DNA of 64,000 nt from Oopsacas minuta (Eukaryota > Animalia > Porifera), in NCBI GenBank assembly GCA_024704765.1, contig JAKMXF010000022.1, forward strand, positions 376,981-440,980, given 5' to 3'. The stretch's first letter is position 1, and every line of letters begins with the position of its first letter. The notes beneath the pieces were generated by a model. It searched no databases. It worked only from the letters and a program-made list of their open reading frames with translations, and had not been told where the DNA came from. The position numbers and the translations under genes were made by a program. Positions 2,172 through 33,522 of the stretch are shown one piece after another.

Positions 2172-5100
2172 CTATTCAAAAGCTATATACAAGGGAAAGA
2201 TAGGATATAAAATAATTCTAAAATATGAATACATTTATACTTACCCTGTAGAGCTTCAATCGCGAAGAACCTGACATCAGGATCTGTATCTGTTTTCATA
2301 ATTTCCAAACACGGCAGTACTTTACTCTTTATTAATCTAATACACAAAATATATAATTACTAGTAGCAATAGCTGGACATTCGTGAAATTTGAACTTACG
2401 ATTGTTCTAATTTCGGCTTCATTTTTATTAGTGTTTTGGATGTATTGAAACGTACATTAGCAACATTGTCAGTAGCCAAATCAACCACAATAGGAAGGAA
2501 TGTGTTATTTACACACTCAGGAGTACAAACCAGGCATAAGTGCTATAAGGAAAAATATTTAATCAAATTACATTTTAGAAAATGAATATATAATATCGCT
2601 AATAATTATGAATATCTTACGTTAAATGCGAATAATGTAGTCATTCTGTGTAGATAGTTAGTGTCTTTCACGAGGGCGATCACTTGAGGTAAAAGAGTTT
2701 CCTAGCACAATGAGATAAGAATCATAAGATTAATACTAGACAATAATATATTAGATTACTACCTCTCCCCATTTGGGACTGAATTTCTCGACTAGCTTTT
2801 TGAGATTCTCAATACCAGCTTCGCGAATGGAGTAAACTAGAAATATTTAACAAATCATAAAGAGACAATTAACTGATAATAAAACTCGCAATTATAAAAC
2901 TTACCATTATCAATAAGCCAACTCAAACAGAGAGCTGATAATTTCTCTCTAAATACTTCAATTCCCTAGAAATATTTCGTATTAACCTAATACGACCGGG
3001 AAAATGTGTGATTTTACGACGTCGAAAAGGTGCTAAAATCTCAAAAGTGATGTTCCTTTTCGTTATAAATGTAACACTTCGGCCGTAATTGGTTAATCTC
3101 TTCGTAAGATATGCATTTAGAAAACTAAATAGTATAGAACTTACCAATTGTTCAGCTAATAGTGGCATATACTCTATGATAGCCATTCTTACTCGCCATT
3201 TGGAGTCATTTGCAAGTTCAACAATAGCAGGTAAGAGAGATTGAGATAGTTGTGTTATCCCAATAACTGAAATAGTAAAATAAATAAATAATAATTAAAT
3301 AAAATGTATAGAAGTTATTTACCTTTATTGACGTGTTCTAGACTTGATATTATATTCAATCGAACTTCAGGGCACTAAGTCAAATAAAAATTTTAAAGTA
3401 AAGAATTGCTTTACTCTAAATTTATCTATAATTACCTCATCCTTCAAAAGTGCAAGATAAATTTCTAATAGATGTTCAATCGTCCTGTAATAGGATAGAT
3501 TATAAATAGTATAAACAAATTAATTAAAAATAGAAGAATATATATATAACTCACTGATCTTTTCCTACAAGAGGAGATAGTCCCATTATAACTGATGCCA
3601 GAGCTGTTTTAACGTGTTGATTCGCATCTTTAGCCAACGACTAATAAAAATTATTAAATGCGTATTTTGTTAAACATTGTAAACATCTAATGTTAGGAAT
3701 TTACATAAAGCAACATGTCAACAGCAAAGTTAATCATAGTTGGTCCTTGCAAATCTGGAAAGACCTACTTTGCCAATTTTCTTGCTTCCTCGACAACTGC
3801 CTCTTCAGGCGAGTACTATCCCACGAAAGGAGTTCGTATTCTAGAATTTTCTTCTGCTACAAATCTCCCACAGACTGGAAAGCCTGTGGACTGTGAGATA
3901 GAGCTTTGGGACTGCAGTGGAGACAGAACATACGAAGCCTGCTGGCCTGCGATAACGAACGGAGCTCAAGGTGTGCTGCTCTTATACAACCAAGATCAGT
4001 TCGAAGCATATGAAGTGGAATCTTTCTACAAAGATTTTGTGGGAAAGATTGGCTTGAAAGAATATCAGTGTCTCCTTATAGCGAACAAGAAGTCTAGCGT
4101 ACAAGGAAGAACTATACCCTCTCCTATCCCCAATGTTAAGCAGATCCATACTGATTTAGGACAGGATCCTGATTATGTGAGAACAGAGTTTAACGAGTTT
4201 CTAGGTAGGATATTCTCTGGAATTAAGAATGTACAGGACCAGGAAGAACTAGGGATTGTAGGAAATACTCAGTGAGGAACGTGGATAAAACTTTACATAA
4301 AACCAGTGTCTATTATAAGAGCAACAAAATCACTTATTTGTTAAGCTAATTCCATACAAATTGATATACTTGCTATGCTGCCCTGATACTAGCTCTTTTC
4401 TTGCTATCTCTACATATTACTAGCTATATATGTATAAGGTTGTAAAGGATTTCCTTTTACCTTTGAATTATTATTCGATTAAATAAACGCTTTTATAGTA
4501 TTTCTTAGTCATTTAATACTGTAAATCTTTGTCCTAATTCCGCATTCTAAATTGCTAGAGAATACAAAGTTAGACAGCTGGTAGTACCTGAAGCTATACA
4601 CACAAATGACTCCAGAAGCCCAAAGGTTTTCTCATTTTTTGAAGAATGGCTAGTTAACTACCTGAAATTCACATATACGGATTCAGATAACGTATATTGT
4701 ATATTTAAAGAGCCAACTTGGAACTGAGGTCATTATTTATCAATGAAATTCAATTCATTCATTGCCAAAAAATGTAAACTCAGATTTTGTATAAAAATTT
4801 TTGTGAGTTTGGTTTTTATTATATTTTTGTTTCTGATATACAAATCAAGATATTCAGGTGAAGACTTAGGAGAAAAACCAATATTTAGACGCACTTTAAA
4901 GAGAGTGCTAAAAAGAGAAGGCATTAGCTATCATATGTTTGGAAATGAAAGTGATATTGAGGTAGTTAGGCAATTGTGGGGTAAACTTAATGATTCACAA
5001 ATTCAATACTATATTCCTGAGTCAAGAAACATAATGGATAAAGCCAATGTAAAATCAAATAATCGAAAGATTTATTATGAGGGAAGAAACATAACAAATA

Positions 5101-8100
5101 TTCTTCATAATTACAAAATAATATACAAGAATAATAATCAAAAGGCCAAATGGCATGTCCTTATGTATACGAATATAGTGGTGAATAATACCGCGATTCT
5201 TGATGAGCTGAACAGATACAAATGGTATCACCCAATACTTATAACCTTCAGCATAGAATCAATGAAAGATAAATTTCAATTCGATTCTTCTAAAATCGTT
5301 GTTAGCATTGTGAGCTCTACAATGCTTGAAAAGTTACAGAAAATGAAAAACTTTGATTTTGTCAAGGAACTAGGAAATCAATGGATTAGATACCAAATTC
5401 CGGTCAGTTGAATTTTAAAATATTCAGTTTATAATTTACGATTTTACTAACAAGATTTATTTAATCAGGCTAAACTCTCAAATAACCTTTGTCCTCATAA
5501 CAACAAACAAGAATGTCATATACAATCTCAATTACAGACAAGCATGGTATGTCTATTACCGGGATTACAACTACTCTCTTATGCTATCTCTCTGCTACTT
5601 ATCAACGAGAAGAGACACAGGCATCAGCAGCTAGCAGAAGAAGCAAGAGAGTACAGTAGAGATTTAAACTTAATACCGCACAAGTTCGTCTGCATAGTAA
5701 GCGTTAGTATAGCAACCAAACTAACATTTAGTTATTTAATAATTGCTAAAATATAGATTGTACTAATTATTTTAACTCTCTAGATATATGCATGAAGCGA
5801 GAGAGCTGTATGACCGTGAAGAGGAGTGGGGATGGAGCGCTATGAGTAGATGGGAGTTGTTAGATCTCCCAATCGTGTGCAGAGAGTTACAAAACAGCTG
5901 TTTTATAAGTTATCTACTAAAGAATAGTATGCCTGTACCACTGAGAGTAGGAAACAACACAGGAGAGCTGGAATGGAAGATATTACGTGCTTACAGTAAG
6001 TTCAGTTTACATAGCTGGGAGGAATACCTGTTACTAATGGAGAATAGAGGGAGCAGATATTTATACAGGATAGTTAATACAATAGAATATCAATCAGAAA
6101 TGGTTATGATAACTGAGAAGAAGAGTGGAGGACTCATATTGGTACAAGAGGGAGAGAATAATCCAATGGACAAGTTAGATCAATATCACAATTTGTTAAA
6201 ACAACAGGAGAAATATCTAACTTCAACACGATACCCGATGCTATTCTCAATTCATCTCGTATTGAGTACCAACAGTCTGTATACGGAGTTATTAAATATC
6301 AAACTGAATACGCTAATACAAGATTTTCCGGAACTAGATATACAATTCTGGGACAAGAATAGAGATCCTGATTTCTTATTAGATATCGTTTCAGTACTTA
6401 ATTCGAATAACGTGGTGTTATCTAATAACCTTAACAAGATGCCAGACTATAATATTATCGAGAAGTGTTATTCTCATACACAAGTAGGTGTACAGATATT
6501 CCCAATCCCTGGTTCTAACGAGTGTATATGTGTTTCTATAGAAGATTATGTACGAGCTATAAAAGGACACACAGACAATTTAAAGTCACTCTCTGACATA
6601 AATACACTATTCAAAAATTTAAAGACTGTCACATTCCTTCAATAATAAATACAAATAATAATATATACATATATATCCAATTATTATATTTTATTCTTGT
6701 TTTTGGAAATGAAAATATATTTAGTAATAAATAAATATATTACCTGAATGCAAGGGTAAAATTGTTGAAGAATTATTTCTGCTCGTCCTTCTTCAGGAAG
6801 ATTTTCACAGAAAACTAACATATTTAAAATATAAAATGATAGGAAATAGTATACAGAGTTAAATGTAAATAGAGCGAATTTCTAGCCCCATACAAATGGG
6901 GAACGGGGTAACATTTTTCGGCCCTGACACCCCTTTCGTGGAGATTACACTGTATGCATATAAAATAACACCTTTGATTTTGCTGGCAGCTGCAGCTCTC
7001 ACTTCAGCCTCTGCGTCTTTGAGCAGATTAGAAAATGCAGGAACAAGATCCTTCTTTGTCAGAACAGGACCTATCGATGTTTGTAGCTAGAAACGATAAA
7101 ATATTAAAGGAATTTGCGGATAATAAGGTTAACTAGAGTATAACTGTTACCTCTTCAAACTTGTCTGTTACCATGTATCTAACCCTCCAAGATTTGTCCT
7201 ACAATAGAATAAATAGAAATTTATTTCTCCTCTACCGAAATCTAATTAGTACCTTACTTTGCATTTTGAGGTAAGAACTGGCATTAAAAGTTGTTCTGCT
7301 TCTGACTTATCTAGAATGTATGCTATTGATACACAAGCTGATATAACGAGTAATCGTACTGAATCCTGAGTGAGAGAAAGAAAATATATACGCAAATGAA
7401 TCTCATAATATATTACTAACTAGATTATACCTGATCGTCTTCTGCTAGTGCAGAGAAGAGAGGAATGAGATCTCCCTTTACATGCTCTTTATCCATCACT
7501 TTAGCTATTTCCTATACGATTTCCGAAATAGAAGTTAATCCGATTTGTATAATCAGTATTGTAACTAACCCCTATTTTTCCTGCTGCTGCTCTTCGTACC
7601 ATGGGTGTGTCATCTTGACATAAGTTCTTTAAATGCCTAATTAGAAGATAAGCTATAAATTGTACTGATACATGTAGATAACTAATCTTACATTCTCAAC
7701 TCTTCCTGTGTCTGTTGAGACACCTTCTGATAGACAACTGAGTATAGACCACAGGCTGATGTACGTGAAGTAAACCACTCAGCTTTATGAGAAATTTGTA
7801 ATTATCAAATTATAGTAATTTGGATAAAAATAACTTTACAACCTGTAGTTAATCTTTTTATTAAAGGTATGTAGTGATCTTGTAAATCTTTTGTAGCATG
7901 TGAGCTCACAAGATTTCGAAGTGATTCTACAGCCTAAGTTTATATCCATAAAATAATAATAAAATAATAAAATAACAATTTACTCCTATGTAGAGAGAAT
8001 TTTTACATTAAAACCCTATCCCCTCAGAAAACAAAGCGAGCTTTCACTAATCTGAAAAAAACTTGAACTTTCAACCACTCAAAAGTGAATAGAAAAATCT

Positions 8101-17600: not shown

Positions 17601-20600
17601 ATGGCTGAATACAGACAAGCACTAATTGGAAGTGAGTGAATGATATATAATATGTAATCACTGTGATAATATTTATTTCATTTATCTGATTCAATTCAAT
17701 AGGATCTGCCGGTCAGAGAGTTCCACCACTAATTAACGTTATCATCAGCACACTGAAAAATTATCCAGATGGAAGTCAGATTCTTAAGGTGAGAGTTTTT
17801 TACTTGTAGAGAATACTGGTATTATCTATTGTTTTTAGGAACTACTTCAAAATGCAGATGACGCACATGCTACAGAAGTTCATTTCTTATTAGATGAAAC
17901 ACAACATGGAACTGAATTCCTACTACACCCTGACGTTGCTAAGTACCAGGGTCCTGCACTTTATGCCTGGAATAATGCAGTATTTGACGATGAAGATTGG
18001 GAAGGAATTCAGAATATTAGCATTAGTCACAAAGAGAAGAAGTTACTCAAAGTTGGAAGATTTGCTTTAGGATTCATTTCAGTCTATCATATTACGGGTG
18101 TGTAATTTCGAGTTATTTATCAATGAAGAAGTGAAATTAATATATATTTCTCTTAATAGACTTTCCTTGTATTCTCAGCAACGACAATGCTCTTCTGCTA
18201 GATCCCCACATGATTATTGACAGAACTGGAGGACTGTTGATTGGATTGGATCAGTTTACATCTGATGCTACTCTTCCTAATCTTAAGAACCATCTTGATT
18301 GTTTCAATGGATATTTCGGTTATGATGGTAGTGACCATTACAATGGTACAATATTCCGATTTCCCTTAAGAACAGGCAAATATACAACTCTCCTACCAGA
18401 TAATAAATATGATTCAGAAAAGGTTCTAGAATCTTTGTTCGATCCTTTCAAAAATGAGATTGAGAATTGTCTCCTATTTATGAAGAACTTAAATAGAATC
18501 CGTGTATCTGTTAAGGATCATTCAGGCTTAATTAGACAACTTTATTCAGTTGAAATTTCCCCTAATGTGTACCGAGAAAGGCTAGGAAAACAGAGACAAG
18601 AGATATTTGAGTTTGTACAACATGAGAAATACTTGAAATTTTCTAAAATCTTTATTTCCATCTTCCCAATATCTTCTATTAGTCAGGATCTTTCTACAAC
18701 TCTTAAGCTCTGGCTTGTAGTTAACATACTCGGTTTGCCAGATGGTGTATTAACATTAACTTATCGTAGACTATCTGATTCCTACTTGCCTTGGGTAGCA
18801 ATCGCTGTTCCTCTACCTTACAGCGAGGATATATTTTCTTGCCTTAAATATGGGAATTGTTGGTCCCTTCAATTTGATAAGATTGACCAAATTTTCAATT
18901 TTATTGCAATACACTTACCTACTATCAATTTGTCAAATACAACATTTGACTTTACTGGGAATATATTCTGTTTCCTCCCAATCGCAGCTAGTTCAAAATT
19001 GCCATTTCACGTACAAGGCTACTTTGCTCTAAGCACAAATCGTCGTTCTATTAAGTGGCCGAGATATGACGACATGAGCGATGAAGCTAAATGGAATAAA
19101 CACCTTGTGGAGAGTTTAAGTACAATCTGCTATGCAGTACTTGTATATTTCAGTGTATCTAAATTCCGAAGTGAGTACGGCGTATCAACTTTCATCTACA
19201 ACTTATGGTCATGTTTGCCTCCAGGTAGTGAGCATGATCAGTTACAAGCTGTACTACATAACGGTGCCTTGTCTCTGCTACAAGACAGACCTTTGGCATT
19301 TAGAACAAACGATATGAAATGGTGTCCACTCGAATCTGCGTATTTTCTTCCGTCTCCTTTCACAAATTGCAGTATTGTTCATGAAAAGGTCTGTAACGAA
19401 TTTCTTATTTCTCTGTCTCAACCAGTAGTTGAAGTTCCAGTTAATATAGCCCAAGTTTTGATTCATTACCAGTTTCTGAGACCTAAAATTCAAATCCTAT
19501 CTCCAAATTTGATAAGACAATTTTTGCTTAATTATAAGGGAAAAGAGTGTTTAATTGATTTCTTACGAGACAATGATAACGTAATTCCCCTATTAGAAGT
19601 TGTTCTTTCAGATCTCAATTACTCTTCACAGGATATATCTTCAACACTTAATGGAATTCAATTAATACCTATATGCAATTCAGATTTGCCTCATGCATTT
19701 GGTGGTTCTAACGTATTTATTAGCAGTCAACCTCAGAAAATCATGAAACTATTCCCTGGACTTGAGACTGTTTTCGTTGAGCCAGAAATTCCTTCTCATA
19801 TTTATTCTTCTCTATTAAAATTGTGTGACATTAAGAATGTGAATCTAGTTAATATTACGGATTTGAAAAGTAGACCTCAACTATTTTTTCAGTTCCTAAA
19901 GCGTTCAATGGAATCTAAATTCGTAATAGAATCAAATGTGAAGTGGACACCTGGGGTTAATAACCAACCAGAGAAACAATGGATTAAGTCCGTGTGGGAG
20001 TTTATTAACGAAGAATCCCCACTAATTGAAATTCTAAAACAACACAAATTACCAATTTTCCCAAAACAAAATGTATCCTCAGCTTCTAAAATTGATCTCC
20101 TCTCACTCAGTATAAATGCTATGCCTTATATTAAACTGAGTGGTGTGAATGCTTACTCAGAGATTGAGAGTATGTTAGCTTCTAGTGGCTGTCATATTTG
20201 TTACAAGAATCAATTTATCTTAAATTACAGTCGATTTGTTATGTCAGCCCTACCAAAGGGTCTCTTTCCATTACTACGACTAAGGGACATTCGTGATAAA
20301 TTCATTAGCAATTTATCAAATGCTGATACTCCAACTCGAGAATCTTTGATTAATATTGTTTTGAATAGCGAACCTACCAGCAGTAGTGACAAAAACACAC
20401 TCAAATTGTTCCCCATTTTCATTTCCATATCAAATCATTGGATTAAGATTGATAACATCCTATTCGTCATACCTCATAATTCTATCCCTAAAGATATCAG
20501 TTTCTATCCCAGCAATTTTCTTAGCCCTTTTCACAAGACCAATGTGAATTTATGTGCCCTAATTAACATACATCCTCTTTCTCTTGATGATACAGTTCTC

Positions 20601-23600
20601 AAATATTTGCTGCCATTGATTGTTGATTGTAAAAATATTCATTCACAGCGAGAAGTTCTAACACTTTGGTTTTTTAACAATTTACACTCTTTTAGCCGAA
20701 ATACATCCAATAAATTATCCACTGCAAAATGGCTCTGTGATTCTACTATAAATACTAATTCAGCCACCCAACTCAAGCTATATTCTCCAGTTGAACTATA
20801 TGATCCACAAGATAAGCATTTGTGTAGATTGTTAAGTACAGAATTGCAGGGAATATTTCCCAATGCTATCTATAAGGATTATTATCAGATGTTGAGAAAT
20901 CTGGGAATGCGATCTTGTGCGAATATTACGAATCTCTCTGCTATGATTACTATTATATTGCGCAAAGTTCCTACCGTAGGCTATTCAGATTGGGTGAATT
21001 CTCTCTTGCATCTATTAAGTCAGCATTTTGATAAGATAGAACACGACAACCACTTCTGGAGTGTATTTACACCGAGTTATTTCTTGTTATCTTCATCGAG
21101 TTCCCAATGTAGTTCTTATCCAACCTTTTTACCATATTTTACTCATATCAATGCATTTTGTAAACCTCAAGAAGTTACATTATGTTCACAGGCTGATTCT
21201 AGTTTAATTGCAGGTGTGACTCCTGTATTGATTGTGGAACCCAATAAAATGGAGAAATACAAGAAAATATATAAATGCATGGGAATAAAGACCATAATTT
21301 CACCAGAACTAGTTTGCAAGCAGTTTACACTCATTGTAGCAGCTGTTACAAACAATGATTCTTATTTAAGTAGTAAAGAAGTGCAATTACTCGTAAATAG
21401 AATATACACATATTTAGGACAACTACTGTCATCGAATCCTGATATATCACGGAATATCCAATTACCTAAAAATTGTATTTTTATCCCAAAGTTGGGTTTC
21501 TTATGTCCAGATCGATTTGCTCTATCTTGTGACAGTTGTGTATTTCCTTACATTATTTCTGTCGACAAACAATATTTCCTTTCGGATGTTAACTTATCAG
21601 AATTCTTCAAATTTTTGAAGGTTGATAAATGCCTCAATTTTCAAAAATATCAGTCCATACTGAATCAACTCCAATGCAATCATCTTTCTGAAGATCAGAT
21701 CGATTTAGCTCTCTCAGTTATTCAATATTCACATAGAATAGCTCGACATGAATTTGGAGGCATAAATGCATACTATATCCTGGCTCAGAATTCTATGATT
21801 TATCCTGCAAGAGAATGTATATTCAATGATTTATCATGGTTGCAACGTTCCGATTTATCAACTGCAAGACCTTTAGTCCATTCGAGTATTTCCAATCAAA
21901 TAGCCAGTGACTTTGGCTGTCTTCCTGCTAGTACAGCATTGGTTCCCACTGCACAGTGTATCTCATATACTTCTGCCTTAGGATGTGGTCAGAGTGAAGA
22001 CATAGTCGCTCGACTGAATGGAATACTCAAAGGATATCGTATGCATATGGATGTATTTAATGAGCTTATTCAGAACTCAGATGATGCAGGTGCACACACA
22101 GTTAAAATCCTATTTGACTTTACAACACACACTTCTGTGTCTGTATTAGATCCAGCCATTAAGGATATCCATGGTCCTGCTCTATACTTTTACAATGACG
22201 CTATGTTCTCGGAAACAGATTTTAAAAGCATTTTGAAGCTCTCTTCTGGGAACAAATTAAACAGTACAGACAAAATTGGTAGATTTGGTATTGGATTTAA
22301 TGCAGTATATAACTTCACAGATTGTCCAAGTTTTGTAAGCGATCGATACGTTCAAATATTTGATCCTCTCCAAAAGTATTTAGGATCCTTTAAACGTTCT
22401 TCTGGTGTGAAGTTTACCTTTGTTGACGATTCAGTCACGGTCATATATAAGGATCAGTTTAAAGTGTATGATAAATTATTTGATTGTAACATTTTGGAAA
22501 AGTCCCATACAAATATACTCTCTTTCGGTTGCCCTTTCGTCTTACTCCAAGTGACCTGTCTTATCAAACATACCGTCGGGAAGACATTATTAAGATCCAA
22601 GAACTAGCTCAACAGGAGATTTCTAAAACGATGCTTTTCTTGCAAAATATTGTTTGCATTGAAATTTACGAGAGAACTACAGATAGAATCAAACTACTTC
22701 AAACAGTAACTAAAAAAAATGATTGTAAAACTACACATTTCATTCAAAATAATCTTGAATATTTTCATAATTACTTACAGTTGGTGGATAGACCAAATAC
22801 GATTATTACTTCCTCAGACACAATATCTATAATTTCTAAATCTGAAGCTGAGCATTCTAAGCAAGATTTCCTAATTTCCTATGCTAGTGGAACTTTAGCT
22901 TGTTTTGACGTTTTACAGAGATTCAAAACCTCATCAGTCGACGTTACATTCCTACCACTGTGTGGAGTTGCTATTCCATTACAATATCTGGAACATATCC
23001 CAGATATACCGATTTGCGGTTTATATACGTTTTTACCTCTGCCCATTAAGAGTCCTCTTTTTCTTAACATTAATGGTTACTTTTCGCTTTCTGATTCAAG
23101 AAAGAACTTATGTGACGCTATAACAAGTCAGAGTAACTATACAAATTACCAAGATCTACCCACTGAGTGGAATTTTGCTTTAATAAATGATGCTCTACCA
23201 AACGCTTTGATCTGTGCTCTCAACAGTTTACCCAAAATCAATTCCACTAATTTCTATAATAATTATTTGTCTCTATGGACTAATACAACTAGCACTGAGT
23301 TATTGTGGAAATCTTTCCCTCTAAATCTTGCCAAACGAATTATGCAATCACCTGCCTGTATATTTTCTTGTGCTCAATCTCCTACCATCTGGGTTGCATT
23401 TAGAGACGTATCTTTTCTATTTCTTGAGCTTTCCTTGAAAACAAATGCTCCCTTTATTCAATGTATTTATGAATTATTTATTAAAAAAGGTATAAGATTA
23501 GCAAATGCTTCGCATTCATTTTTCTCCACAGATTTATATAAAGCATTCTCAGAGCTTGCACCTCAGAAGATATTTGATCTTGAGAGAATTATCAAAACTG

Positions 23601-26600
23601 TGATTTCTCCCGATTTACATAATTTGTCGCTCTCTCAGATAATTATTATCATGAAAGCAATCATACCATTATGTATCTACCCGCATAAGGAGTGGTTATT
23701 CAATTGGTTGTCTCAAACTGAATGTATCCCATGTGGACTTGATTCTGTTAACTTCAAATTAAACTTTCCTTGTAAGGTAGTTTGTCCAAATACGATTATT
23801 TCAAAACTCTATTATGCTAAAGAAATGAGACAACCAGTACCTGAACTACGTCAAATGTTCACTTTCAACGATCCTAATAATGCAGATAGTATTGTCCTTC
23901 AGAGATTGGGAGTTATTTCGCAAACTCTACCTGAATGTGAAATAATCGAGCGTTGTGGCATTACTGGAAATTTAGAAATTGGATTAGCAATGGAACATTC
24001 ACTTATTCTTATTGAGTATCTGTCACGAGAAAATTCAGAGGTTTTTAACTCAGTTTATCCTAAGATACGATCAATTCGTTTTATACCCACGTATACAGAT
24101 GAAATAACTAGAGTTCTTTCAAGCCAAGTTCACCCTTTTGCTGCTCCTATAGAATGTTATTCATTTTATGATCGTCATCTAGTCACTCCATTTTGTACGT
24201 CAGCCTGTAGTGAAGTTAAGGAGACAGCTGAGGTTCTGAAGCTTTTCCATAATCCTTCATTTGATACCGTCTTTCAAGTTTTGACTACCCTTATAGCACA
24301 ACCAGACAAAATTCGTGATATCAAAATTGATGATAAGATTATCGCTATATACCGATACATTTCTTCATCTGATCCTGAGTATTTGCCTCAAATCATAACA
24401 GACGGTAAGCAGTGGATATGGGAACCAGAAATGAGATCGTTTTACGCATCTGATCAAGTAATACTATCTCCATACTTAATGGGTGTTCCAAAAAATAAAT
24501 ATTTGGTTAGTTTTCCATATAGAGATATGTTAATGGATAAGCATTTTGAAACTTACTTAAATAATGTTGGTATCAAAAATCGAATCGATGACGAAACAAT
24601 AATTGATTGTTTTGAGAGAATTTACAATGATTATGGTGAACAACCCGTTGATGCAAATCTGATTGCATTCATTCTAAAACTAATTGATTCAATTCAAAAC
24701 TTCGGGTATTGTTCAGAGAAAGTATTCCTCTTAAGTCAGTTAGATATTCTCCATCGTCCGAGAGAACTATATGTTAACTATAAATCTCATTTGTGTAGTT
24801 TTTTGAACGATGAATGTTACTCTAAATATATTGTAAAGCTTCAAATCCATCCTTCAAGAGCTTTCCAACTAGGAACTCGGTCTTGTGAAGAATTATTTTG
24901 TACAGATGATTCTGAGTTTGGGTTAAGTGAAGAAATCACTGATCGTATAAAAGGCTTGATAAGAGAAATGCCAATTGAATCAGTTTTTAAAGAGTTAATA
25001 CAGAATGCGGAAGATGCTAAAGCTACTGAAATGGTATTTATACTAGATGATCAGGATTACAGTACCCACACAAATACTCTAGTTGAAAACAATTTCAATT
25101 ATCCCAATTTGAAAGATCTTCATTCTTATCCATCACTTAATGTATACAATAATAAGGGATTTTCAGAGGGTGATATTAAAGGGATACAGAATTTGAGTGT
25201 TGGAGGGAAAACGAATGATAGAAATACTATTGGAAAATTTGGCCAAGGTTTTAATTCTGTCTATCATATCACTAATGCTCCAACCTTTGTTTCTACACTG
25301 CTTGAGAAAAAAGAAATATCATTTTGTTGTTTTGATCCATTCCTGAAGTACACAAATTGTAAATTCCAACAACAGAATTTAAAACGTGGATTAAGAAGAA
25401 ATATTCCTTTTAATAACACAAACAAATTTTCCGATCAATTGTTTCCTTTCAAATACGAGAACTTTAATAATAATAATACAGTTAATGAAAGTCTTACTAA
25501 CATCAGGAAAAATAAAGAATATACAATGTTTCGTTTCCCCCTTGACATTCAAAAACCTGAAACCAATACTTCTATCCTAGGTACTGCTTACGAAAATGTA
25601 AGAATCTCCTACTCTCTTGAAAATTTGGAAACAGAGTTATTGAAAGTAATCGAATCATATCCTGATATTCTCCTCTTCTTGACTCATCTTTGTAGCCTTA
25701 AAGTATTAAGAATTGATAAAAATAGAAATGTTAAATTGCTCAGTTCACTGAATGTTAAACCCAGAAAACCAATTTTAACTGAACTTCCGTGTTGGTTTCC
25801 TTTGAAACATTCTCCTTTCTTAAAGATACAAGAAAAAGAGAATAAATCTTTGCAATCTGATAAACGGAAATGGCTTATCTATTCTATTCCGGACATTCCA
25901 ATTGCCGAGTATGTTGTTGAGGATCCTTCTCTTACAGAATATTCACATTATTACTCTAATGAAAAGTTATCAGGATATGGCTCTGTAGCAGTGAGAATTT
26001 CTAATCTCAACAACCGTTCAAACTATTCAAATTTATTTACTTTTTTACCAGTTGGATTGCTAGCTGATTTTCCAGTTCACATAAATGCTGCTCTTATACT
26101 TGATTCTTCGAGACAAAGTGTCCACGATAGAAAGATTGATTGGGAAATTAGATGGCACTCTTCCATCATTAAACTCATTCTAGTGCCTCTCTATACAATG
26201 CTTTTATTAGATCTCCGGGATCCAAGAACTGTTATCAACGACGTGTCAACGAATAAAAAACGCTATTTTGATTGGTATTATTCACTATTCCCATGTACTG
26301 AACCCAAAAACATTTTCTTATCAGAGATTAAGAAGACACTCTACGATTTTCTTGTCAATGTTAACCCAGAAATCTTACTAGCAGATAATCTGCTAGTTTC
26401 AGAGACAAGGATTTGGTACAACTTAAAGGGTACTAATTGCGGTATTTTTAAACCATCTTCTTTTTTCAAACTTCCGTCTACTGATATTGATAGAGATTTT
26501 TATCACCAAATTATTTCAAATCATGAATTAAGAGAATCTGAGATTAGCAAGTCTCTTATTATAATTAAATTTCCCCTCACTTTTGCTCCTCTTCGCCTCT

Positions 26601-29600
26601 TACATTTATTTAAGAGTAATGAACTAAATCCAATAAAGCTTCTCAGATACTTGAATAATAATCCAAAGTGTGTATTTAGAGAAAATGCTGCTTCTAATAA
26701 CCTTGAATCCATGGTTCTTACTTTTCCACAATTACTAACGTTTTTAGAATACATCCTAACTGATAGTAAAGATTACCCATCCACACATAAAATTCCTTTA
26801 AGAATTGATTTGAATACTAATTTATGCGATTTTGACCCACAAAATCCTTCTTTTATTCCAACTTTCTCTTCGCTGTTACCACATTGTGCTGAACATTTTA
26901 TTTCTTCAGATTACAACTGTGAAGTTATACAAAAATTGTTATACATTGGATATGTTAGGGATTTAGATTCGGATTATCTAGCAAAACATTTGGAAATAGA
27001 ATCTTCAAGCAAATGCTTAATATTTTGGGAATATATTCTATTTAATAAAATAGATCAAAATGGGTTAACCCAATTTAAAAATCACCTTCTTCTTCCAGTT
27101 TATGATCGCGATGATGATCATTTCATTTACTATCCAATTAGTAAATTGGAATTTCTATTAACTTCAGCTCTCGAGCAAAATGATAAGATTCTCTTTAGTG
27201 CATTGAATAAACTAGGATGTCCACTTTTGGGTTTAGAGTTATTTAAAAGTTCATACTTATCCAGTAGTAATACATTTAATTTGGATACATTCCTCACTGA
27301 AATAGAAAAATTATTAAATCCTATTGCAATATCCACAAGTAGATCTTCTCATATAATTCTTGGTTCAATTGAATGTTCTACTCTTTCATCTGCTGATCTT
27401 GAACCGACAGAATCTAGCTTGTTGCTAACATTATTTTCTACTCTCCAACCATGTAAACTTTCAAATAACCAGCTCCGTATATTCTCTACTCTTAAGATAT
27501 TTAAAAGCATTAACTCCAAATGCTTCTCTTTAAAAGAATTCAATATTTGCTTTGTGAATGACCACCGTATTCCTATTGGCACTGAACTGTTTGATCTGCT
27601 ACACGAAAGACATAAATTAATCGTTTTCCAACCAACTTGTAGTATTGTCCTCCAAAATTTCTGTCTAAAACTGGGAAAAGACTTTCTCGATCTCAGTAGA
27701 TTATTTATTGAATATATATTCAAATATCTGTCAACTCTTCCTTTCGTTGAACAAAATAGTTTAGTCAGTTTTATAGCTGGAAAACTTGCCGAGAACGAAG
27801 TTGATTATCTTCCATATCTTATTGATAATTTAAAACAAATTTCTTTTATTTTGAATGCAGACGGCTTGCTTTGTACTGTTAATGAGTTTTATTGTGGTAA
27901 TTTACCGTTCGTCAATACATTCCTGGCAAATTATTCACTTCCTGAGGACTGGAGAGGTGAGAATCTAAAACCACTTTTTCTAAAACTTGGCTTACAAACT
28001 TCTGTCAGTTTAGATAAGCTATTGTTTGTTGCTAATGAATTTTCACTTAAGAAATTCGAGAGTGAAAAATTAAAAATCTTTTTGGTGGAATTTGCGCGGA
28101 TTTTACAAAATCTTAATAATTTCGAAACGAATGAAATCGCTATTATTCAACAGATCTCAAAATTGAAGTTTCTCCCTGTTTGGAGATATGCTAAGATCAC
28201 TGATCGCCAAATACAGGAATCTTCTACATTGGCTAAATTCTCTGAAGCTCAGTTATACGAAAATCAACATTGCTGTTGTTGTGCTTCTTGGGTACACACA
28301 TACAGTTTAAATTTGCCGGATAGTTCATACGAAATTTTGAATATTCAAAAGACACCTCCACCAGATGTTGTTAAACAACACCTGCATCTAATAACAACTC
28401 ATATTTTACAACAGTATTCTCCACCTACACAAATTCCGAATTGTTATGGTGAGTACTTCAGATCTTCATATGAGTATTTCCAGCACTTGTTAGATAGTTG
28501 TGACATTTCTCTGGTAGAATTTTATGATGTACGTTGTATATTATGGGAAAGACAGTTATTCTATCCAGTTAATATGTTGTTCACTACTACTGAAGGGATC
28601 AAACCCTTTATAATACAACTCCCATCTGAGTTGTCACATTTATTCAGTAAATTCTTTGAGTGTATTGGAGTTAAACAGGCTGCAGATTACACTCATTACT
28701 CTTACGTGTTAAAGAAAATACATCGAACCTTATCACAGAGAAATGAAAATTTAGCTGGAAGTTCTTACGAAGTTCAGATCAATATTGTATTCGCTCTATT
28801 CATCAAAACATTACGAAGTTCCAATATTAACGAAATTAGACTTGATTTGGATAGTACTTTAGTTTTGACGAGAAATCCCAAACCAAAACTTCTCCCATGC
28901 TCTGAAGTTGTATATGCTGACAATCAAGCTCTTCTCTCAAGAGTTACAAAAAAAAATATTGAGATTAACATACTCAAAACCTTAGAACCTGATGGAAGTA
29001 ATTCTTGTGTACCTCCTGACTGTCTAAAATTAAAAAGACTAAGTAAGGTCATCTCAGAGAATATTGATCCAATAGTCAACTCTTACAAAATTACAAATAC
29101 TGGTTTAGCAGATTATTTGGAAAAGAAATTTAATGACCCTTTATTTTACCGATTATTACGTAGACTATTTTATCACTTAACTAAGAAGGATTTGAATAAT
29201 ATGAGATTCAAAGGTTTCACAATCCAAGATCTTCTTAACAATCTTAAAGTTGAATCTGTAAAGCAAATAGATATTAATATTAATGACAAGCGTTATGATA
29301 GGCAGTATAAGCTAGAAAATGCCTGTGGATGTTACATATGCACGAATACCAATAACAATATATTCCTTCTGTCTGACCATCACACAATGCGTGATTGCAT
29401 TTTCAAAGACATTGCTTTCTATCTGAATACTTACCTTGAGGAAATATTCAGCGAAGTTCTAGCTCATTTAGAAATATGTATACAATTGATAGATTATTGT
29501 AAAATTATGGAAAAGCTGAGTGAGTTCAACATAGATCTAGATCCATGGGACCTACCAGGAGAAATTATAAAAACAGATGATCAAATTAATACCCACCCTC

Positions 29601-30238
29601 ATTCGAATTTTTCAAATAATTACCATGGCCATATGTCCTATGGTACCCCTTTCCAACCCCCAAGACCAGAGGGTATATCAATCGGAGAACCAGATCCTTC
29701 TGCAGCTAAACTATCTATAAATGTATCACAATGCAACCTCTTAGCAGCTAAACATTTAATCACACCGATCCCTCCTACAAACCTAACCTTCCCAGCTCTT
29801 TCTTGCTTCCTCAGCTTCGAAGCACTTATCAATATCTTTCATGCTCTTTTACATTTTGTCGGTTCTCGAAACAGACTTACAACAGAGAGAAACTTAAGAG
29901 TTTATTTCAACTTAATCTCTCAAGTACTCCCCGAAGATATTAGTAAAGAAATTCATATGTTAACGTGTTCCCTCATGGACTATGACTTTGACACCAGATA
30001 TCCCTCTGCTTCTCTCATTCCTTGCCTATGCAATTACATTCCACAACAACTATACTCTCTAAATCAAGCTGAAGATGCTATTGTAATAGTTAATCAGATA
30101 ATAATCCTGGTAACGAATACATTTCCAGATTTGAGAAAAATGCTTGCCCCACAGAATCATCAGATGTTCACATGTAGTACTGCTACTTCTAGTCCACAGC
30201 TTATTACGAGACTTCCATGTAGTAAGTTGAAGTTGTAA
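17601..30238 (+). CDS. SACS-like: Sacsin-like protein: three SRRs (HSP90-like GHKL) plus C-terminal HEPN, ~4,150 aa after repairing one frameshift at ~22500
   Basis: Exons 17601-17631, 17703-17788, 17839-18097, 18160-30238. Three ELxQNxxDA ... GxFxxGF.xVY...TxFRxP blocks. C-terminal EPDPSAAK...DTRYP...AEDAI is HEPN-like. Confidence 0.93.
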
Positions 30239-30250
30239 TGCCAATTCCGT

Positions 30251-30347
30251 CAGTGGCGTAGCCATTTCAGGCCTAGGCCTGGGCCTGGCTAGTAGAGGTT
30301 GTGATTGTGTAATATAGCCTATCTAGACCTGGGCAACCACGCCACTG
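30251..30347. mobile_element. hAT-like MITE (97 bp)
   Basis: TIRs CAGTGGCGT / ACGCCACTG; flanking 8-mers aattccgt / atttctgt match 6 of 8, consistent with an aged 8-bp TSD. Confidence 0.65.
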
Positions 30348-30548
30348 ATTTCTGTATGTTTACAATCTATTATGATACGTAGTTACGTACGTATATACGA
30401 TTATACTTATACGGCGCCAGTACGATAGATTCATAGACAAATAGTACATAACATGGAGCATTTATATTAAAGTTTGCTTAACATGGAGTTTCATTTATCG
30501 CGAACTACGCCTTTATATGAATAGTGTGTTTTTGTCCTGTGAGAGTTC

Positions 30549-31217
30549 ATGATAAGCGACCCTGACCTGGCTCACTGTATCTTATTTCCATCTGATGTTC
30601 TTGTTCTATTAACCTTTATACTATATATTTATTATTTAGTTGACATGTGTCAGGGGATTCGTCAAGTTGCTCTTGAGACTGACAGTAGTGAATTTGCTGC
30701 AATCACACGTAGATTTCATCAATCTATGCCATACGCTGGAGTTATCACGATTACAAAGATAATCAATCCAGATAGTTGGAAAATGTTTGAGGCGAATATT
30801 AAGCAAGAACTTCCCAGATTCCCAAATATATGTCTAACTATTCGCCTCCTCTTCCACGGTTCTAGCAAAACTGATCCTAATATTATTATCAAAGATTCCA
30901 CCGGATTTAATATGAAGTTTGCAGACAGAGGCTTGTGGGGTCATGGAATTTATTTTGCTTTCAGTTCCTCCTATGCACATCGCTATTGTTTCAATATTGC
31001 AAAAGAAAGACATTGTATATTTGCTGCTTCAGTATTAATTGGAAATTCAAAACAATTGCCTCAGAATAGAAGTTTAACTGGGCCTCCTCCCATGCCTAAC
31101 GGTAGAGATAATTACCACAGCGTCCAGGGTACACGTGATGGAGAACTGATTCATGTTGTATACAAGAATTCTATGGCTTATCCTAACTATCTGATAACAT
31201 ATGCAACTCATACGTAA
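30549..31217 (+). CDS. PARP-family catalytic domain, H-Y-I triad (mono-ADP-ribosyltransferase type); possibly the terminal exon of the sacsin gene
   Basis: LLFHGS, GHGIYFA, ELIHVVY and AYPNYLITY. A strong acceptor at 30639 suggests the hydrophobic N-terminal stretch of the ORF is intronic. Confidence 0.9.
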   Translation: MISDPDLAHCILFPSDVLVLLTFILYIYYLVDMCQGIRQVALETDSSEFAAITRRFHQSMPYAGVITITKIINPDSWKMFEANIKQELPRFPNICLTIRLLFHGSSKTDPNIIIKDSTGFNMKFADRGLWGHGIYFAFSSSYAHRYCFNIAKERHCIFAASVLIGNSKQLPQNRSLTGPPPMPNGRDNYHSVQGTRDGELIHVVYKNSMAYPNYLITYATHT

Positions 31218-31715
31218 GCTATTTTATTATTTGTTAGATCATTTTAAGTTTATTATAGATTTATATTTTCGATCTATTTTCGTGGGATTTTTATTTTATC
31301 TACAAATTATTTATTTATTTATTTATTGTATTTTCTGACTTAATAGCTGTCTCTTAGTAGCTGGTATTATGTGATTATTTCAAAATATGTAGACCATTCA
31401 TTACGTATTTGATTATATTAATTTCCTAGACAGATTGCATTTTCATAGGGGTAATTATTGAATTGGTAATCGATCTAGGGGAATAGGGGTAATTGAATCA
31501 ATTGTTTGGGATCCTCCGCCTATTCTGATTCTAAATATTCTGCCTTTTATCGATTATATTAGCCAATAAGGAATATGATGTGGCATTGAAATAGCATGTG
31601 GTTACGGGAATTAATAGGAATCAAGCAACCAACTTAGGGCTATCTATACCTGATCACGTAATTCTTTTTATCTAGCTATCTTAATCCTAATCTTAACTAA
31701 TTCTACAAACACAAT

Positions 31716-33278
31716 ATGGTTCGAAAACTTTACGATTTATGCATCTTAGCTATTGAACTGAATCTCAAACACATTCCTAAGTTGAGAATTAATCTGCCTG
31801 GCTACCTTAGAGAGCTCCTCCTCCATAGACTAGCACTTCATAACCATCTCAGTCCTCCTCACAAACCTTACGTAACGTACAACTTATTCTCAGACTCTCT
31901 TAAACACATTAATTTTAGCTATTGTACACAGATAACTGATGATTTGTTCTGTCTACTAAACGATTGTGGTTGTAAACTGACAAGTTTCTGTTTGAATACT
32001 AGTTTAGGATTCTCTGTTGAAGGGCTAGCTAATTTTCTACTCGCACAAGATGAATTGGAAATATTAAAATTGAAAAGACTGCATACTCTGTCTTTATTGG
32101 ACTCGTTTGAAGGGAAAATTCGATCTACAAGGCTAAGCGAGCTTTCCTTCACATATTGTGATTTTATGACAGACAAGATTTTGTGTTCAATAGGTTTGTA
32201 TTCCAAAGGTATAACCAAGTTAAGGCTGGAGCGAATGAAGCTGATAACAGATGAAGGAGTTGTAGGCTTGTTGAAGCAGCAAACTGAAGGGAAATTGATA
32301 ATTTTTAAAGTTTATCGAATGTTTGAATTGTCAGGGAAAACATTGGATTCATTTTCAGAATTCTCACCCAAATTAGAACAACTTATTATACCAAATTGCA
32401 CTAAAGTATCTTTATTGTCTATTTATACTGTTCTCTCTAAATGCGGCAATTTAAAAGTATTGGATATTCCAATTACAACCAATCTTACCGGTGAAACTTT
32501 TGGCGAGATTATCTCACAGAAATGGAATAGTCTCCAACAACTGAATATTAGCGGCAATACTATTGTTCCTGAGACGATGGCACTGCTGTCTGTAGCATTC
32601 CCAAATTTAAAGAAATTCTATTTTGGAGGTACCGAAATCAACAACTCTATTTTTGAGCAACTTCTAATGAATTTTAATGGACTAACTACTTTTGATTGTA
32701 TGTACTGTAGGAATGCAGATCAGAAAACTTCTGAATTAATCTCAGAATATTGTCACTCTTTGGAGACGTTAGCGATTGGAGCTTGGAAACTTGACGGAGA
32801 GGGATTGTTACCCTTGTTTGAGGAGAATAGAGCACTTAAGCTAACTTCAATTGAGCTTACAGGTTGTAAGAACACTTCTCCAAGAGTACTAAATTCTCTA
32901 ATAGGAAACTGTAAGAATCTAGAGGTTCTATTTCTACGTGGAATTAACGCTGTAGACGATCAGACTGTCTATGATATTGCTAACAACTTAAAACAGCTTA
33001 AAAAGATAAGTTTTCGCGGTTGTACTCACATATTGTTAGAAGAAAGTTTAGTCGAATTGATCCTAGAGTGTAGAATGCTACAAATGATTGGATTCCCTGG
33101 TCTTTTGTGTGTACGAGACAGACTAATATATGTAATAGCTGATAACCTATTTGATCTGGAAGTGTTGTATATTGACGGATGTAATTATGTCAGTTCACAT
33201 GCACTGGATTATCTACGTAGAAAGACTACTTCTACCTTGTATATCGAGCATAAACTGGTTGGAGCTATACACATATGA
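31716..33278 (+). CDS. Leucine-rich repeat protein (FBXL/AMN1-type LRRs) with N-terminal BC-box/Cul2-box-like motif, intronless
   Basis: KLYDLCILAI (LxxxCxxxI) then LPGYLRELLL; repeated LxxLxLxxCxxITD units. Confidence 0.85.
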   Translation: MVRKLYDLCILAIELNLKHIPKLRINLPGYLRELLLHRLALHNHLSPPHKPYVTYNLFSDSLKHINFSYCTQITDDLFCLLNDCGCKLTSFCLNTSLGFSVEGLANFLLAQDELEILKLKRLHTLSLLDSFEGKIRSTRLSELSFTYCDFMTDKILCSIGLYSKGITKLRLERMKLITDEGVVGLLKQQTEGKLIIFKVYRMFELSGKTLDSFSEFSPKLEQLIIPNCTKVSLLSIYTVLSKCGNLKVLDIPITTNLTGETFGEIISQKWNSLQQLNISGNTIVPETMALLSVAFPNLKKFYFGGTEINNSIFEQLLMNFNGLTTFDCMYCRNADQKTSELISEYCHSLETLAIGAWKLDGEGLLPLFEENRALKLTSIELTGCKNTSPRVLNSLIGNCKNLEVLFLRGINAVDDQTVYDIANNLKQLKKISFRGCTHILLEESLVELILECRMLQMIGFPGLLCVRDRLIYVIADNLFDLEVLYIDGCNYVSSHALDYLRRKTTSTLYIEHKLVGAIHI

Positions 33279-33385
33279 TTGTTAACGTTTGTTGTTGTTG
33301 TTTTTGTTATGTTTTGTATTTTTATTCGTTTGTTCGTGATTACTGATAAATTATTTTCTACTACACTTCAGTTCTCTTTTACTCC

Positions 33386-33522
33386 CAGGGCTGTGGCTTC
33401 GGATACTAAGCATCACCTGTGACAATTACGTCATAATTTCGTCATAGGTGTGAATTTTCTTCCAAGACTCGAACTTGTCCGAGTCAGGCCCAAACACCCC
33501 TGTATCCCATAAATCAGCCCTG
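33386..33522. mobile_element. Possible hAT-like MITE remnant
   Basis: Inverted ends cccagggctg...ggatac / gtatcc...cagccctggg; no matching TSD found. Confidence 0.3.

What the first reader, a model, noticed from the sequence alone, without database searches (positions are those of the whole stretch)
17601..31217. Cryptic sacsin-HEPN-PARP fusion: in-phase splice route joins the giant sacsin-like ORF to a mono-ART domain
Seen: a perfect GTAAGT donor at 30222, 14 nt before the sacsin stop codon (phase 1), and a strong ttattatttAG acceptor at 30639 (also phase 1). Splicing gives ...RLPC-I-DMCQGIRQ... and a ~4,340-aa protein: 3x GHKL SRR, HEPN, PARP(H-Y-I). The PARP ORF alone has no regulatory domain and an intron-like N-terminus. 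Established: H-Y-I/L PARPs are mono-ADP-ribosyltransferases, several antiviral; vertebrate sacsin ends in J-domain plus HEPN with no ART. Inference: an ATPase-gated ADP-ribosylating machine, architecturally like sensor-effector conflict systems. Counterpoint: an ATTAAA at ~30460 and an alternative first exon (ATG 30549, 63-nt intron to the same acceptor) allow a standalone PARP.
Basis: partly seen in the sequence, partly recalled or inferred. Interest (0 to 1): 0.82.

Follow-up and report, generated by a model that had tools for sequence, protein, structure and literature searches.

The report
Sacsin-like giant spliced to PARP
In the glass sponge Oopsacas minuta a 418-base intron joins a giant three-ATPase sacsin-like gene to a small ADP-ribosyltransferase exon, giving one protein of about 4,300 residues; the combination recurs in related sponge assemblies and is already in GenBank, but I found no paper that describes it.

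Summary
GTAAGT sits at 30222, 14 nt before the sacsin stop. The acceptor AG is at 30638-39. Both are phase 1 and read ...RLPC-I-DMCQGIRQ.

The predicted splice is real. In one public run that behaves like RNA (X4), a 6.5-kb contig lies on 27800-30221 and then 30640-31703. It skips exactly those 418 bases (GT..AG). Three DNA-like runs of the same sample are colinear.

The GenBank model KAI6660974.1 ("Sacsin-like", 2722 aa) already carries this joint. It starts only at 22631, because the assembly has a frame break at an A-run (22498-22501).

In ten further genes from six other datasets, a PARP exon follows a sacsin/HEPN reading frame. In eight of these genes I mapped a phase-1 GT..AG intron at the same point.

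The sacsin-linked PARP domains form one clade (100/100 support) with an invariant H-Y-I triad.

The HEPN fold is confirmed (Z 13.5 to human sacsin HEPN). Its R-x4-H motif reads R-x4-R here.

No J domain and no ubiquitin-like domain were found. The standalone-PARP alternative has no support in the RNA-like run.

The function proposed (an ATPase-governed mono-ADP-ribosyltransferase, perhaps in defence) is inference. This scan had already found the same architecture on other pieces of this genome (s1-226647 and others).

The parts
17601..17631 (+). Exon 1, with the start codon; ends in phase 1 before GTGAGT
   Evidence: Sequence. The residue numbering fits the full-length paralogue P0009 exactly: its residue 12 falls at 17705.
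17703..17788 (+). Exon 2, the start of the first sacsin repeat (..[14 protein letters not shown])
   Evidence: Sequence. tblastn of P0009 residues 12-39, 89% identity.
17839..18097 (+). Exon 3, the ATP-binding motifs of SRR1 (ELLQNADDA at 17839, GRFALGF at 18055)
18160..30221 (+). Exon 4, the 12-kb body: rest of SRR1, then SRR2 (motif I at 22062), SRR3 (motif I at 24992) and HEPN. The frame changes at the A-run 22498-22501.
   Evidence: ORFs 18210-22607 and 22529-30238. Pfam SACS. Motifs. Colinear with orthologue P0002 and paralogue P0009 across the break. The RNA-like contig covers about 24786-30221.
22498..22501 (+). Frame break: the reading frame shifts at a run of four A. Upstream it reads ..DCNILE, downstream [13 protein letters not shown].
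   Evidence: The relatives read straight through. The public model KAI6660974.1 starts after the break, at 22631.
29681..30139 (+). HEPN domain. The R-x4-H position reads RLTTER (from 29873), so the catalytic histidine is absent. A DTRYP motif is present.
   Evidence: AlphaFold model with pLDDT 75.7. Foldseek's top match is 3o10, the human sacsin HEPN. VIA gives Z 13.5, rmsd 3.3, 131 aligned; the next five matches are also HEPN at Z 11.3-12.9. Alignment A1.
30222..30639 (+). Phase-1 intron of 418 nt, from GTAAGT to ttattatttAG. It holds the sacsin-frame stop (30236-38), an ATTAAA (30466-71) and the ATG at 30549.
   Evidence: A joint 30221/30640 'skips 418, GT..AG' is seen in run X4 only, in a 6500-nt contig. 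The same joint is in P0001.
30640..31217 (+). Exon 5: PARP catalytic domain with H at 30855, Y at 30951 and I at 31149; stop at 31215-17
   Evidence: Pfam PARP, 64 bits. Best solved relatives are PARP12, 14 and 15. The triad is invariant in 7 sequences. Coordinates.
31218..31703 (+). 3' untranslated stretch, at least as far as the spliced RNA-like contig reaches
   Evidence: Record 25 of X4 ends at 31703, where it overlaps the next contig by 30 nt.

Best explanation
SHOWN. Positions 17601-31217 form one five-exon gene of Oopsacas minuta. Three short 5' exons and one 12-kb exon encode a sacsin-like protein. [quoted passage not shown] A conserved phase-1 intron (30222-30639) removes the last five sacsin-frame codons and the stop. 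It joins the HEPN domain to a terminal exon encoding a PARP catalytic domain with an H-Y-I triad, of the PARP12/14/15 kind. In the one RNA-like run available, the spliced form is the assembled one.

The same arrangement occurs in ten further genes from six other datasets. In eight of them I mapped the intron at the same point. All sacsin-linked PARP domains form one clade. This fits a single ancient fusion followed by duplication.

INFERRED. The protein is a mono-ADP-ribosyltransferase whose target choice or activation is governed by the sacsin body. ATP-dependent conformational cycling of the GHKL modules, together with HEPN-mediated pairing, would position or release the C-terminal transferase. 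Here the HEPN is probably a non-catalytic dimerisation or nucleotide/RNA-binding module.

A role in defence or stress is suggested by four things: tandem paralogue arrays, many replacement polymorphisms, the antiviral-type PARP clade, and the reported kinship of sacsin ATPases with the Tiamat defence proteins. I put about 0.9 on the gene structure and about 0.35 on the defence reading.
For: Splice and public model:
- the X4 contig (6500 nt) has the joint 30221/30640 with GT..AG ends. X1-X3, from the same sample, are colinear with even depth. The intron carries only a 194-nt contig at depth 2.5.
- KAI6660974.1 holds ..RLPC-I-DMCQ.. exactly.

Related genes:
- syntenic orthologues L002, L003 and L005 share the neighbours IRK, GH5 cellulase, LRR_FBXL15 and B-box.
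- more sacsin-then-PARP genes in L001, L004, L006, L007, L008 and L009.
- a phase-1 GTAAGT/GTATGT/GTAAAG donor, and an acceptor AG followed by the bases that complete the junction codon and an Asp (or, in L007, a Pro) codon, in nine genes.
- in P0005 and P0007 a 93-nt intron-like stretch is open in frame, so the PARP stays in frame spliced or not.
- sacsin-linked PARPs form one clade with 100/100 support.

Domains:
- H-Y-I is invariant.
- HEPN fold.
- three intact ATP-binding motif sets.

Searches and papers:
- in the nearest 150 of 1.84 billion representatives, the only other proteins over 1,500 aa are macro-WWE-PARP proteins (five scanned), none with a sacsin domain.
- The preprint 10.64898/2026.09.30.754977 relates SACSIN to Tiamat and describes C-terminal effector swapping.
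- PMC3710099 reports sponge sacsin-Death fusions.
Against: - The kind of run X4 is not on record. Calling it RNA is my inference from the joint, the uneven depth between neighbouring genes and the adaptor remnants.
- Contigs drop rare variants and cannot prove that one molecule runs from exon 1 to the PARP exon. The contig reaches back only to about 24786.
- The GenBank model may rest on the same RNA data, so it is not independent.
- The frame break at 22498-22501 may be real. In that case the PARP-bearing product here would be shorter, or the gene decaying.
- Nothing was measured: no enzymatic activity, no target, no induction.
- The HEPN lacks its catalytic histidine.
- A chaperone-type role, as proposed for vertebrate sacsin, fits the data equally well.
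Confidence: 0.8

Rival explanations
1. The PARP exon is also, or mainly, expressed on its own. This could be from a promoter inside the intron (ATG 30549), or by adding a spliced leader to the same acceptor at 30639 and starting at the in-frame ATG 30645. It would give a free 190-222-aa mono-ART. The fusion transcript would then be read-through.
For: - An ORF from ATG 30549 runs uninterrupted into the PARP domain.
- An in-frame ATG lies 6 nt after the acceptor here and in L002 and L005.
- A leader-like 18-19-nt sequence is joined to acceptors of the next gene in X4.
- A spliced leader is reported in the glass sponge Aphrocallistes vastus (PMC10282587).
Against: - In X4 nothing lies on 30474-30639, and no loose end is listed at 30640. 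However, 35 loose ends were not shown.
- The in-frame ATG after the acceptor is absent in L003, L001, L004, L006 and L007.
- The donor inside the last sacsin codons is conserved in phase in nine genes. A separate gene would not need that.
- In P0005 and P0007 the frame stays open through the intron.
Confidence: 0.12
2. This copy is broken. The frameshift at 22498-22501 is real. Then the first 1,600 or so residues end at the stop at 22605, and the PARP-bearing part is made only from an internal start (as in the 2722-aa GenBank model) or not at all.
For: - The assembly reads four A and the frame shifts there.
- The annotators split the gene at this point.
- The RNA-like contig I could see does not reach the site.
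Against: - Both halves are free of stops over 1,446 and 2,573 codons and are colinear with relatives without loss of residues.
- All motifs are intact on both sides of the break.
- The break sits in a homopolymer, a typical place for a long-read assembly error.
- Downstream exons are expressed and spliced.
Confidence: 0.25
3. The fusion is real, but it works in protein quality control rather than defence. The sacsin body would act as a chaperone, as proposed for vertebrate sacsin, and the PARP domain would mark clients or co-chaperones by mono-ADP-ribosylation.
For: - The SRR layout is the same as in vertebrate sacsin, and the HEPN fold is closest to human sacsin HEPN.
- PMC3710099 summarises the chaperone evidence.
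Against: - No J domain and no ubiquitin-like domain, the parts that tie sacsin to Hsp70 and the proteasome.
- Many tandem paralogues.
- 10 of 14 differences between assembly and reads in 27896-29378 change the residue.
- The nearest PARP relatives outside sponges are of the macro-PARP/PARP12 kind.
Confidence: 0.3

Closest known systems
Vertebrate sacsin (SACS, ARSACS protein)
   Same: - Three SRR (Hsp90/GHKL-like) modules with long-short-long spacing (1408, 977 and 1563 residues between landmarks).
- A HEPN domain after them. The predicted fold is closest to the human sacsin HEPN structure 3o10 (Z 13.5).
- Like human sacsin (PMC3710099), the HEPN here lacks the R-x4-6-H motif.
   Different: - No N-terminal ubiquitin-like domain: the protein starts 11 residues before SRR1.
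- No DnaJ domain in Pfam scans.
- A PARP catalytic exon added after HEPN.
PARP12 / PARP14 / PARP15 / ZAP group of mono-ADP-ribosyltransferases
   Same: - The catalytic domain is most similar to these (E 1e-14 to 1e-11).
- It has the H-Y-I triad.
- The nearest non-sponge long relatives are macro-WWE-PARP proteins.
   Different: - No zinc fingers, WWE or macro domains.
- The domain forms its own long-stemmed clade.
- It hangs on a sacsin body.
Oopsacas minuta paralogues: KAI6651970.1 (4346 aa) and the 5379-aa gene of earlier finding s1-226647
   Same: - The same sacsin-HEPN-PARP order.
- Named 'Sacsin-like' in GenBank and 'Poly [ADP-ribose] polymerase' in UniRef.
   Different: - 41-46% identity over the body and about 50% in the PARP domain.
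- Different contigs.
- The present gene is the member of a conserved synteny block, and its public model is cut short by the frame break.
Sacsin-like proteins with Death domains in the sponge Amphimedon queenslandica (PMC3710099)
   Same: A sponge sacsin-like body with an added signalling or effector domain, read by those authors as apoptosis- or immunity-related.
   Different: The added domain there is a Death adaptor, described as N-terminal in sacsin paralogues of certain animals. Here it is an enzyme at the C-terminus. No PARP fusion is mentioned in that paper.
Tiamat and Tiamat-like GHL ATPase defence proteins (bioRxiv 10.64898/2026.09.30.754977)
   Same: - The preprint places the ATPase family next to SACSIN.
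- C-terminal effector domains are swapped among members.
- The family is common in sponges.
   Different: - Tiamat has one ATPase, a DUF3684 middle part and a PD-(D/E)xK nuclease.
- The preprint does not contain the words PARP or ADP-ribos.
- Pfam gave no DUF3684 match here.

Membership tests
Sacsin family | Repeated SRR supradomain with an Hsp90/GHKL-type ATP-binding site | tested here: met
   Pfam SACS PF25794 at 6e-65 and 3.6e-53, far above the 32.8-bit cut-off. Three ExxxNAxDA motifs, each with a G-x-F-x-x-GF loop.
Sacsin family | C-terminal HEPN domain | tested here: met
   No sequence match. The model's best structural matches are all HEPN: 3o10 at Z 13.5, then 1ufb, 2hsb, 1wol, 1o3u and 4nqf at Z 11.3-12.9. 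The catalytic histidine is absent.
Sacsin family | DnaJ domain before HEPN (vertebrate sacsin) | tested here: not met
   No DnaJ match in Pfam scans, even at E up to 10 over 25502-30220.
Sacsin family | N-terminal ubiquitin-like domain (vertebrate sacsin) | tested here: not met
   SRR1 starts at residue 12 of the model, which leaves no room for one.
PARP (diphtheria-toxin-like ADP-ribosyltransferases), mono-ART class | PARP catalytic domain | tested here: met
   PF00644 at 64 bits against a cut-off of 26.7. PDB matches cover nearly the whole catalytic domain of PARP12 (residues 5-190 of 191).
PARP (diphtheria-toxin-like ADP-ribosyltransferases), mono-ART class | H-Y-[hydrophobic] triad in place of H-Y-E | tested here: met
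   H72, Y104 and I170 align with the PARP12 triad and are invariant in seven sponge sequences.
PARP (diphtheria-toxin-like ADP-ribosyltransferases), mono-ART class | NAD+-dependent mono-ADP-ribosylation activity | not testable with these tools
   Needs a biochemical assay.
PARP12 / PARP14 / PARP15 orthologue groups | Accessory zinc-finger, WWE or macro domains N-terminal to the catalytic domain | tested here: not met
   The only Pfam hits in the body are SACS and HATPase_c_3. The non-sponge relatives do carry macro and WWE domains.
Tiamat-like GHL ATPases | DUF3684 middle region and a C-terminal PD-(D/E)xK nuclease | tested here: not met
   No such Pfam match. The C-terminus is HEPN plus PARP. 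Kinship of the ATPase itself was not tested here; it is taken from the preprint.

The most novel reading that the evidence does not exclude
Glass sponges carry an expanded family of self-contained sensor-effector proteins. Three sacsin-type ATPase modules would sense a foreign or damaged molecule. HEPN pairing would then switch on a C-terminal mono-ADP-ribosyltransferase. This would be a natural fusion showing that the sacsin lineage began as an immune machine related to bacterial Tiamat, and it would point to a sacsin-PARP partnership to look for in vertebrates.
Probability: 0.3. Interest if true: 0.8.

Novelty: new variant of a known kind. Interest (0 to 1): 0.55.

Why it matters
What sacsin does is still unclear, even though it causes a human ataxia. 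A conserved natural fusion of the sacsin body to an enzyme with a readable output, ADP-ribosylation, gives a functional hint of the 'Rosetta stone' kind. It also gives a tractable assay: which molecules does the protein modify, and does ATP binding control that?

For the PARP field it adds a new kind of regulatory partner for an H-Y-I transferase of the clade that includes antiviral PARPs. For sponge biology it marks an expanded, polymorphic gene family that is a candidate for innate immunity.

The practical points are smaller. The public model of this gene is truncated by a frame break. ORF-based gene calls in sponge assemblies split the PARP exon off as a false small gene.

Tried and rejected
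- The 222-aa ORF at 4743-5411 has the same length as the PARP ORF, but it is unrelated.
- Sequence searches for HEPN gave nothing: the last 400 residues against the PDB, and Pfam at E up to 10. Only the fold search settled it.
- I first read P0005 and P0007 as intron-less single-ORF fusions. The DNA shows a GTAAGT..AG stretch of 93 nt that happens to be open in frame. They are therefore not evidence of intron loss.
- A short intron to explain the frame change near 22500 was rejected. The candidate GT..AG pairs are 17-39 nt long and out of phase, and the relatives are colinear there.
- Paper searches for sacsin-like + PARP + immune, and for Oopsacas minuta + sacsin, found nothing.
- The leader-like 18-mer is not in the window.
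- I could not name the organisms behind the ENA assemblies ERZ25071281, ERZ25766962, ERZ25069837, ERZ25072730 and ERZ25072740, or behind run SRR2064712. That they are glass sponges is my guess from synteny.
- The joined five-exon protein was never built, searched or folded. Exons were searched by reference, and the frame break was never bridged with real letters.
Full report
**What the sequence shows**

The window is AT-rich eukaryotic DNA. It comes from the glass sponge Oopsacas minuta.

- GTAAGT is at 30222-30227.
- The sacsin-frame stop is at 30236-38.
- The acceptor AG is at 30638-39.
- Both splice sites are in phase 1, and the junction reads ..RLPC / I / DMCQGIRQ.
- A 222-codon ORF (30549-31217) carries a Pfam PARP domain at 64 bits against a cut-off of 26.7.

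An in-phase GT/AG pair alone means little. Fourteen such pairs exist around this spot.

**RNA evidence**

One study has four public runs of one sample that hold this stretch. I laid them on 27800-33500.
- X1-X3 behave as DNA. Their contigs are colinear across 30222-30639 and their depth is even, about 90-135 except for one short contig.
- X4 behaves as RNA.
  - A single 6500-nt contig lies on 27800-30221 and then on 30640-31703.
  - The tool lists this as a joint that "skips 418, GT..AG", seen in X4 only.
  - The intron is covered only by a 194-nt contig (30240-30433) at word depth 2.5, against 104 for the spliced contig.
  - Nothing lies on 30474-30639, where the alternative first exon would be.
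  - The neighbouring gene has a different depth (322).
  - Adaptor remnants end some contigs.

The contig extends about 3 kb upstream of 27800, so it links SRR3, HEPN and PARP.

Limits: the run type is not on record, contig depth is crude, and contigs drop rare isoforms.

**Public annotation**

P0001 (2722 aa) is identical to the window from ATG 22631 to 30221 plus 30640-31214, and it holds the predicted joint. The fusion is therefore not cryptic. UniRef even names the protein "Poly [ADP-ribose] polymerase".

A second O. minuta protein, KAI6651970.1 (P0009, 4346 aa), has the same architecture at full length.

**Gene structure**

I compared the window with P0009 and with the orthologue P0002 and read the sequence directly. 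This gives five exons:

| Exon | Coordinates |
|---|---|
| 1 | 17601-17631 |
| 2 | 17703-17788 |
| 3 | 17839-18097 |
| 4 | 18160-30221 |
| 5 | 30640-31217 |

Together they hold 13,013 coding bases.

Inside exon 4 the frame shifts at the A-run 22498-22501. Upstream the reading is ..DCNILE. Downstream it is [13 protein letters not shown]. The relatives read straight through at this point. This explains why the public model starts only at 22631. I could not tell whether the break is an assembly error or real.

**Domains**

- *SRR modules.* There are three, each with an intact ExxxNAxDA motif and glycine loop, at 17839, 22062 and 24992.
- *HEPN.*
  - The last 190 residues of exon 4 gave no sequence match.
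  - An AlphaFold model built from eight homologues (pLDDT 75.7) matches HEPN structures first.
  - Human sacsin HEPN 3o10 scores Z 13.5, rmsd 3.3 with 131 residues aligned. Five more HEPN proteins score Z 11.3-12.9. Unrelated helical bundles score near 5.
  - The R-x4-H position reads RLTTER here. Two paralogues in another assembly keep the histidine.
- *Absent domains.* No J domain was found and there is no room for a ubiquitin-like domain.
- *PARP.*
  - The PARP exon is closest to PARP12, PARP14 and PARP15 among solved structures.
  - H72, Y104 and I170 align with the PARP12 triad and are invariant in seven sponge sequences.

**Comparative evidence**

Three ENA assemblies hold syntenic orthologues (L002, L003, L005). 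Their neighbours are the same as here: inward-rectifier channel, GH5 cellulase, a 340-aa ORF, sacsin, PARP, an LRR_FBXL15-like gene and a B-box gene.

Further sacsin-then-PARP genes lie in L001 (two complete, in a tandem row of three sacsin genes), L004, L006, L007, L008 and L009, the last a short Logan contig.

In the nine genes whose junction I mapped, this one included, the splice signals are conserved:
- A phase-1 donor (GTAAGT, GTATGT or GTAAAG) sits just before the sacsin stop.
- An acceptor AG sits just before the first PARP-frame codons, most often read as ..AG|ttgay.. or ..AG|tcgat...
- Intron lengths range from 59 to about 1115 nt.

In P0005 and P0007 the 93-nt stretch is open in frame, so ORF callers read one 4,250-aa protein.

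An exhaustive search of 1.84 billion representatives with the PARP exon gave these results:
- The closest hits are the window's own protein and short ORFs that turn out to be PARP exons behind sacsin genes.
- The other proteins over 1,500 aa among the best 150 that I scanned (five of them) are macro-WWE-PARP proteins without a sacsin domain.

A maximum-likelihood tree of 43 PARP domains puts all ten sacsin-linked ones in one clade with 100/100 support and a long stem. Four short ORFs join them. Three of these proved sacsin-linked as well, and the fourth has no context.

One fusion followed by duplication is the simplest reading. The root of the tree is not established.

**Literature**

- The HEPN survey (PMC3710099) describes sacsin-Death fusions in Amphimedon and notes that some sacsin HEPN domains have lost the catalytic motif.
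- A 2026 preprint (10.64898/2026.09.30.754977) places SACSIN next to the bacterial defence ATPase Tiamat and reports swapping of C-terminal effectors. It contains no mention of PARP or ADP-ribosylation.
- Searches pairing sacsin with PARP or with Oopsacas found nothing.
- Within this scan, the same architecture was already reported on other pieces of this genome: s1-226647 (followed up, 5379 aa), s1-284924 and s1-205331.

**How it likely works**

Shown: one gene, one spliced mRNA form, an intact transferase triad and intact ATP-binding motifs.

Inferred: a mono-ADP-ribosyltransferase tethered to, and probably controlled by, a large ATP-driven scaffold whose HEPN domain serves pairing or ligand binding rather than RNA cleavage.

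A defence role is suggested by four things:
- Tandem expansion.
- Ten replacement changes among fourteen assembly-versus-read differences in 27896-29378.
- The PARP clade involved.
- The Tiamat link.

A chaperone-linked role is an open rival.

**Verdict**

- The mechanism is plausible but untested.
- The architecture is in databases, yet I found no description of it in the papers I could search.

Noticed in passing
window 31674-31749: In the RNA-like run X4, contigs carry 18-19 letters (TCTTCATAAAAAACTTAC, or the same with one more A) that are absent from the window. They are joined just before the AG acceptors at 31674/75 and 31748/49, at the start of the LRR gene. This is a candidate spliced leader. 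The sacsin-PARP contig overlaps the next contig by 30 nt at 31674-31703, so RNA words run on from the PARP 3' end into the next gene. That may mean a polycistronic precursor.
   Followed up: partly
window 22498-22501: A frame break in the 12-kb sacsin exon at a run of four A. Relatives are colinear and unbroken. The GenBank model KAI6660974.1 starts after it, at 22631, and so lacks SRR1 and half of SRR2.
   Followed up: partly
window 29198: A>G (Asn to Asp) is seen only in the RNA-like run X4, not in the three DNA-like runs of the same sample. It could be RNA editing or an expressed allele.
   Followed up: no
window 27896-29378: Fourteen differences between the assembly and the reads (thirteen of them in all four runs) fall within 1.5 kb before the HEPN domain, and ten change the residue. 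Only one further difference (31483) was listed in the rest of the stretch up to 33500. This may be a second, divergent haplotype with many replacement changes.
   Followed up: partly
window 11489-36181; L002, L003, L005: A gene block is conserved across four assemblies: inward-rectifier K channel, GH5 cellulase, a 340-aa ORF, sacsin-PARP, an LRR_FBXL15-like gene and a B-box gene. The LRR and B-box genes always follow the PARP exon on the same strand.
   Followed up: partly
L001 (ERZ25071281), whole locus; L004 8001-28762: Tandem rows of sacsin-PARP genes lie head to tail, three in L001 and two in L004. This points to a local expansion in that organism.
   Followed up: partly
P0004 and P0007, HEPN region (alignment A1, columns 78-85): Two paralogues keep a canonical R-x4-H (RLDSKH), where the window gene and five other sequences have arginine in place of the histidine. 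HEPN catalytic capacity seems to vary within the family.
   Followed up: no
P0010 (ENA, 1154 aa): A protein with five consecutive PARP catalytic stretches is among the nearest relatives outside the sacsin-linked clade. Its origin and meaning were not examined.
   Followed up: no
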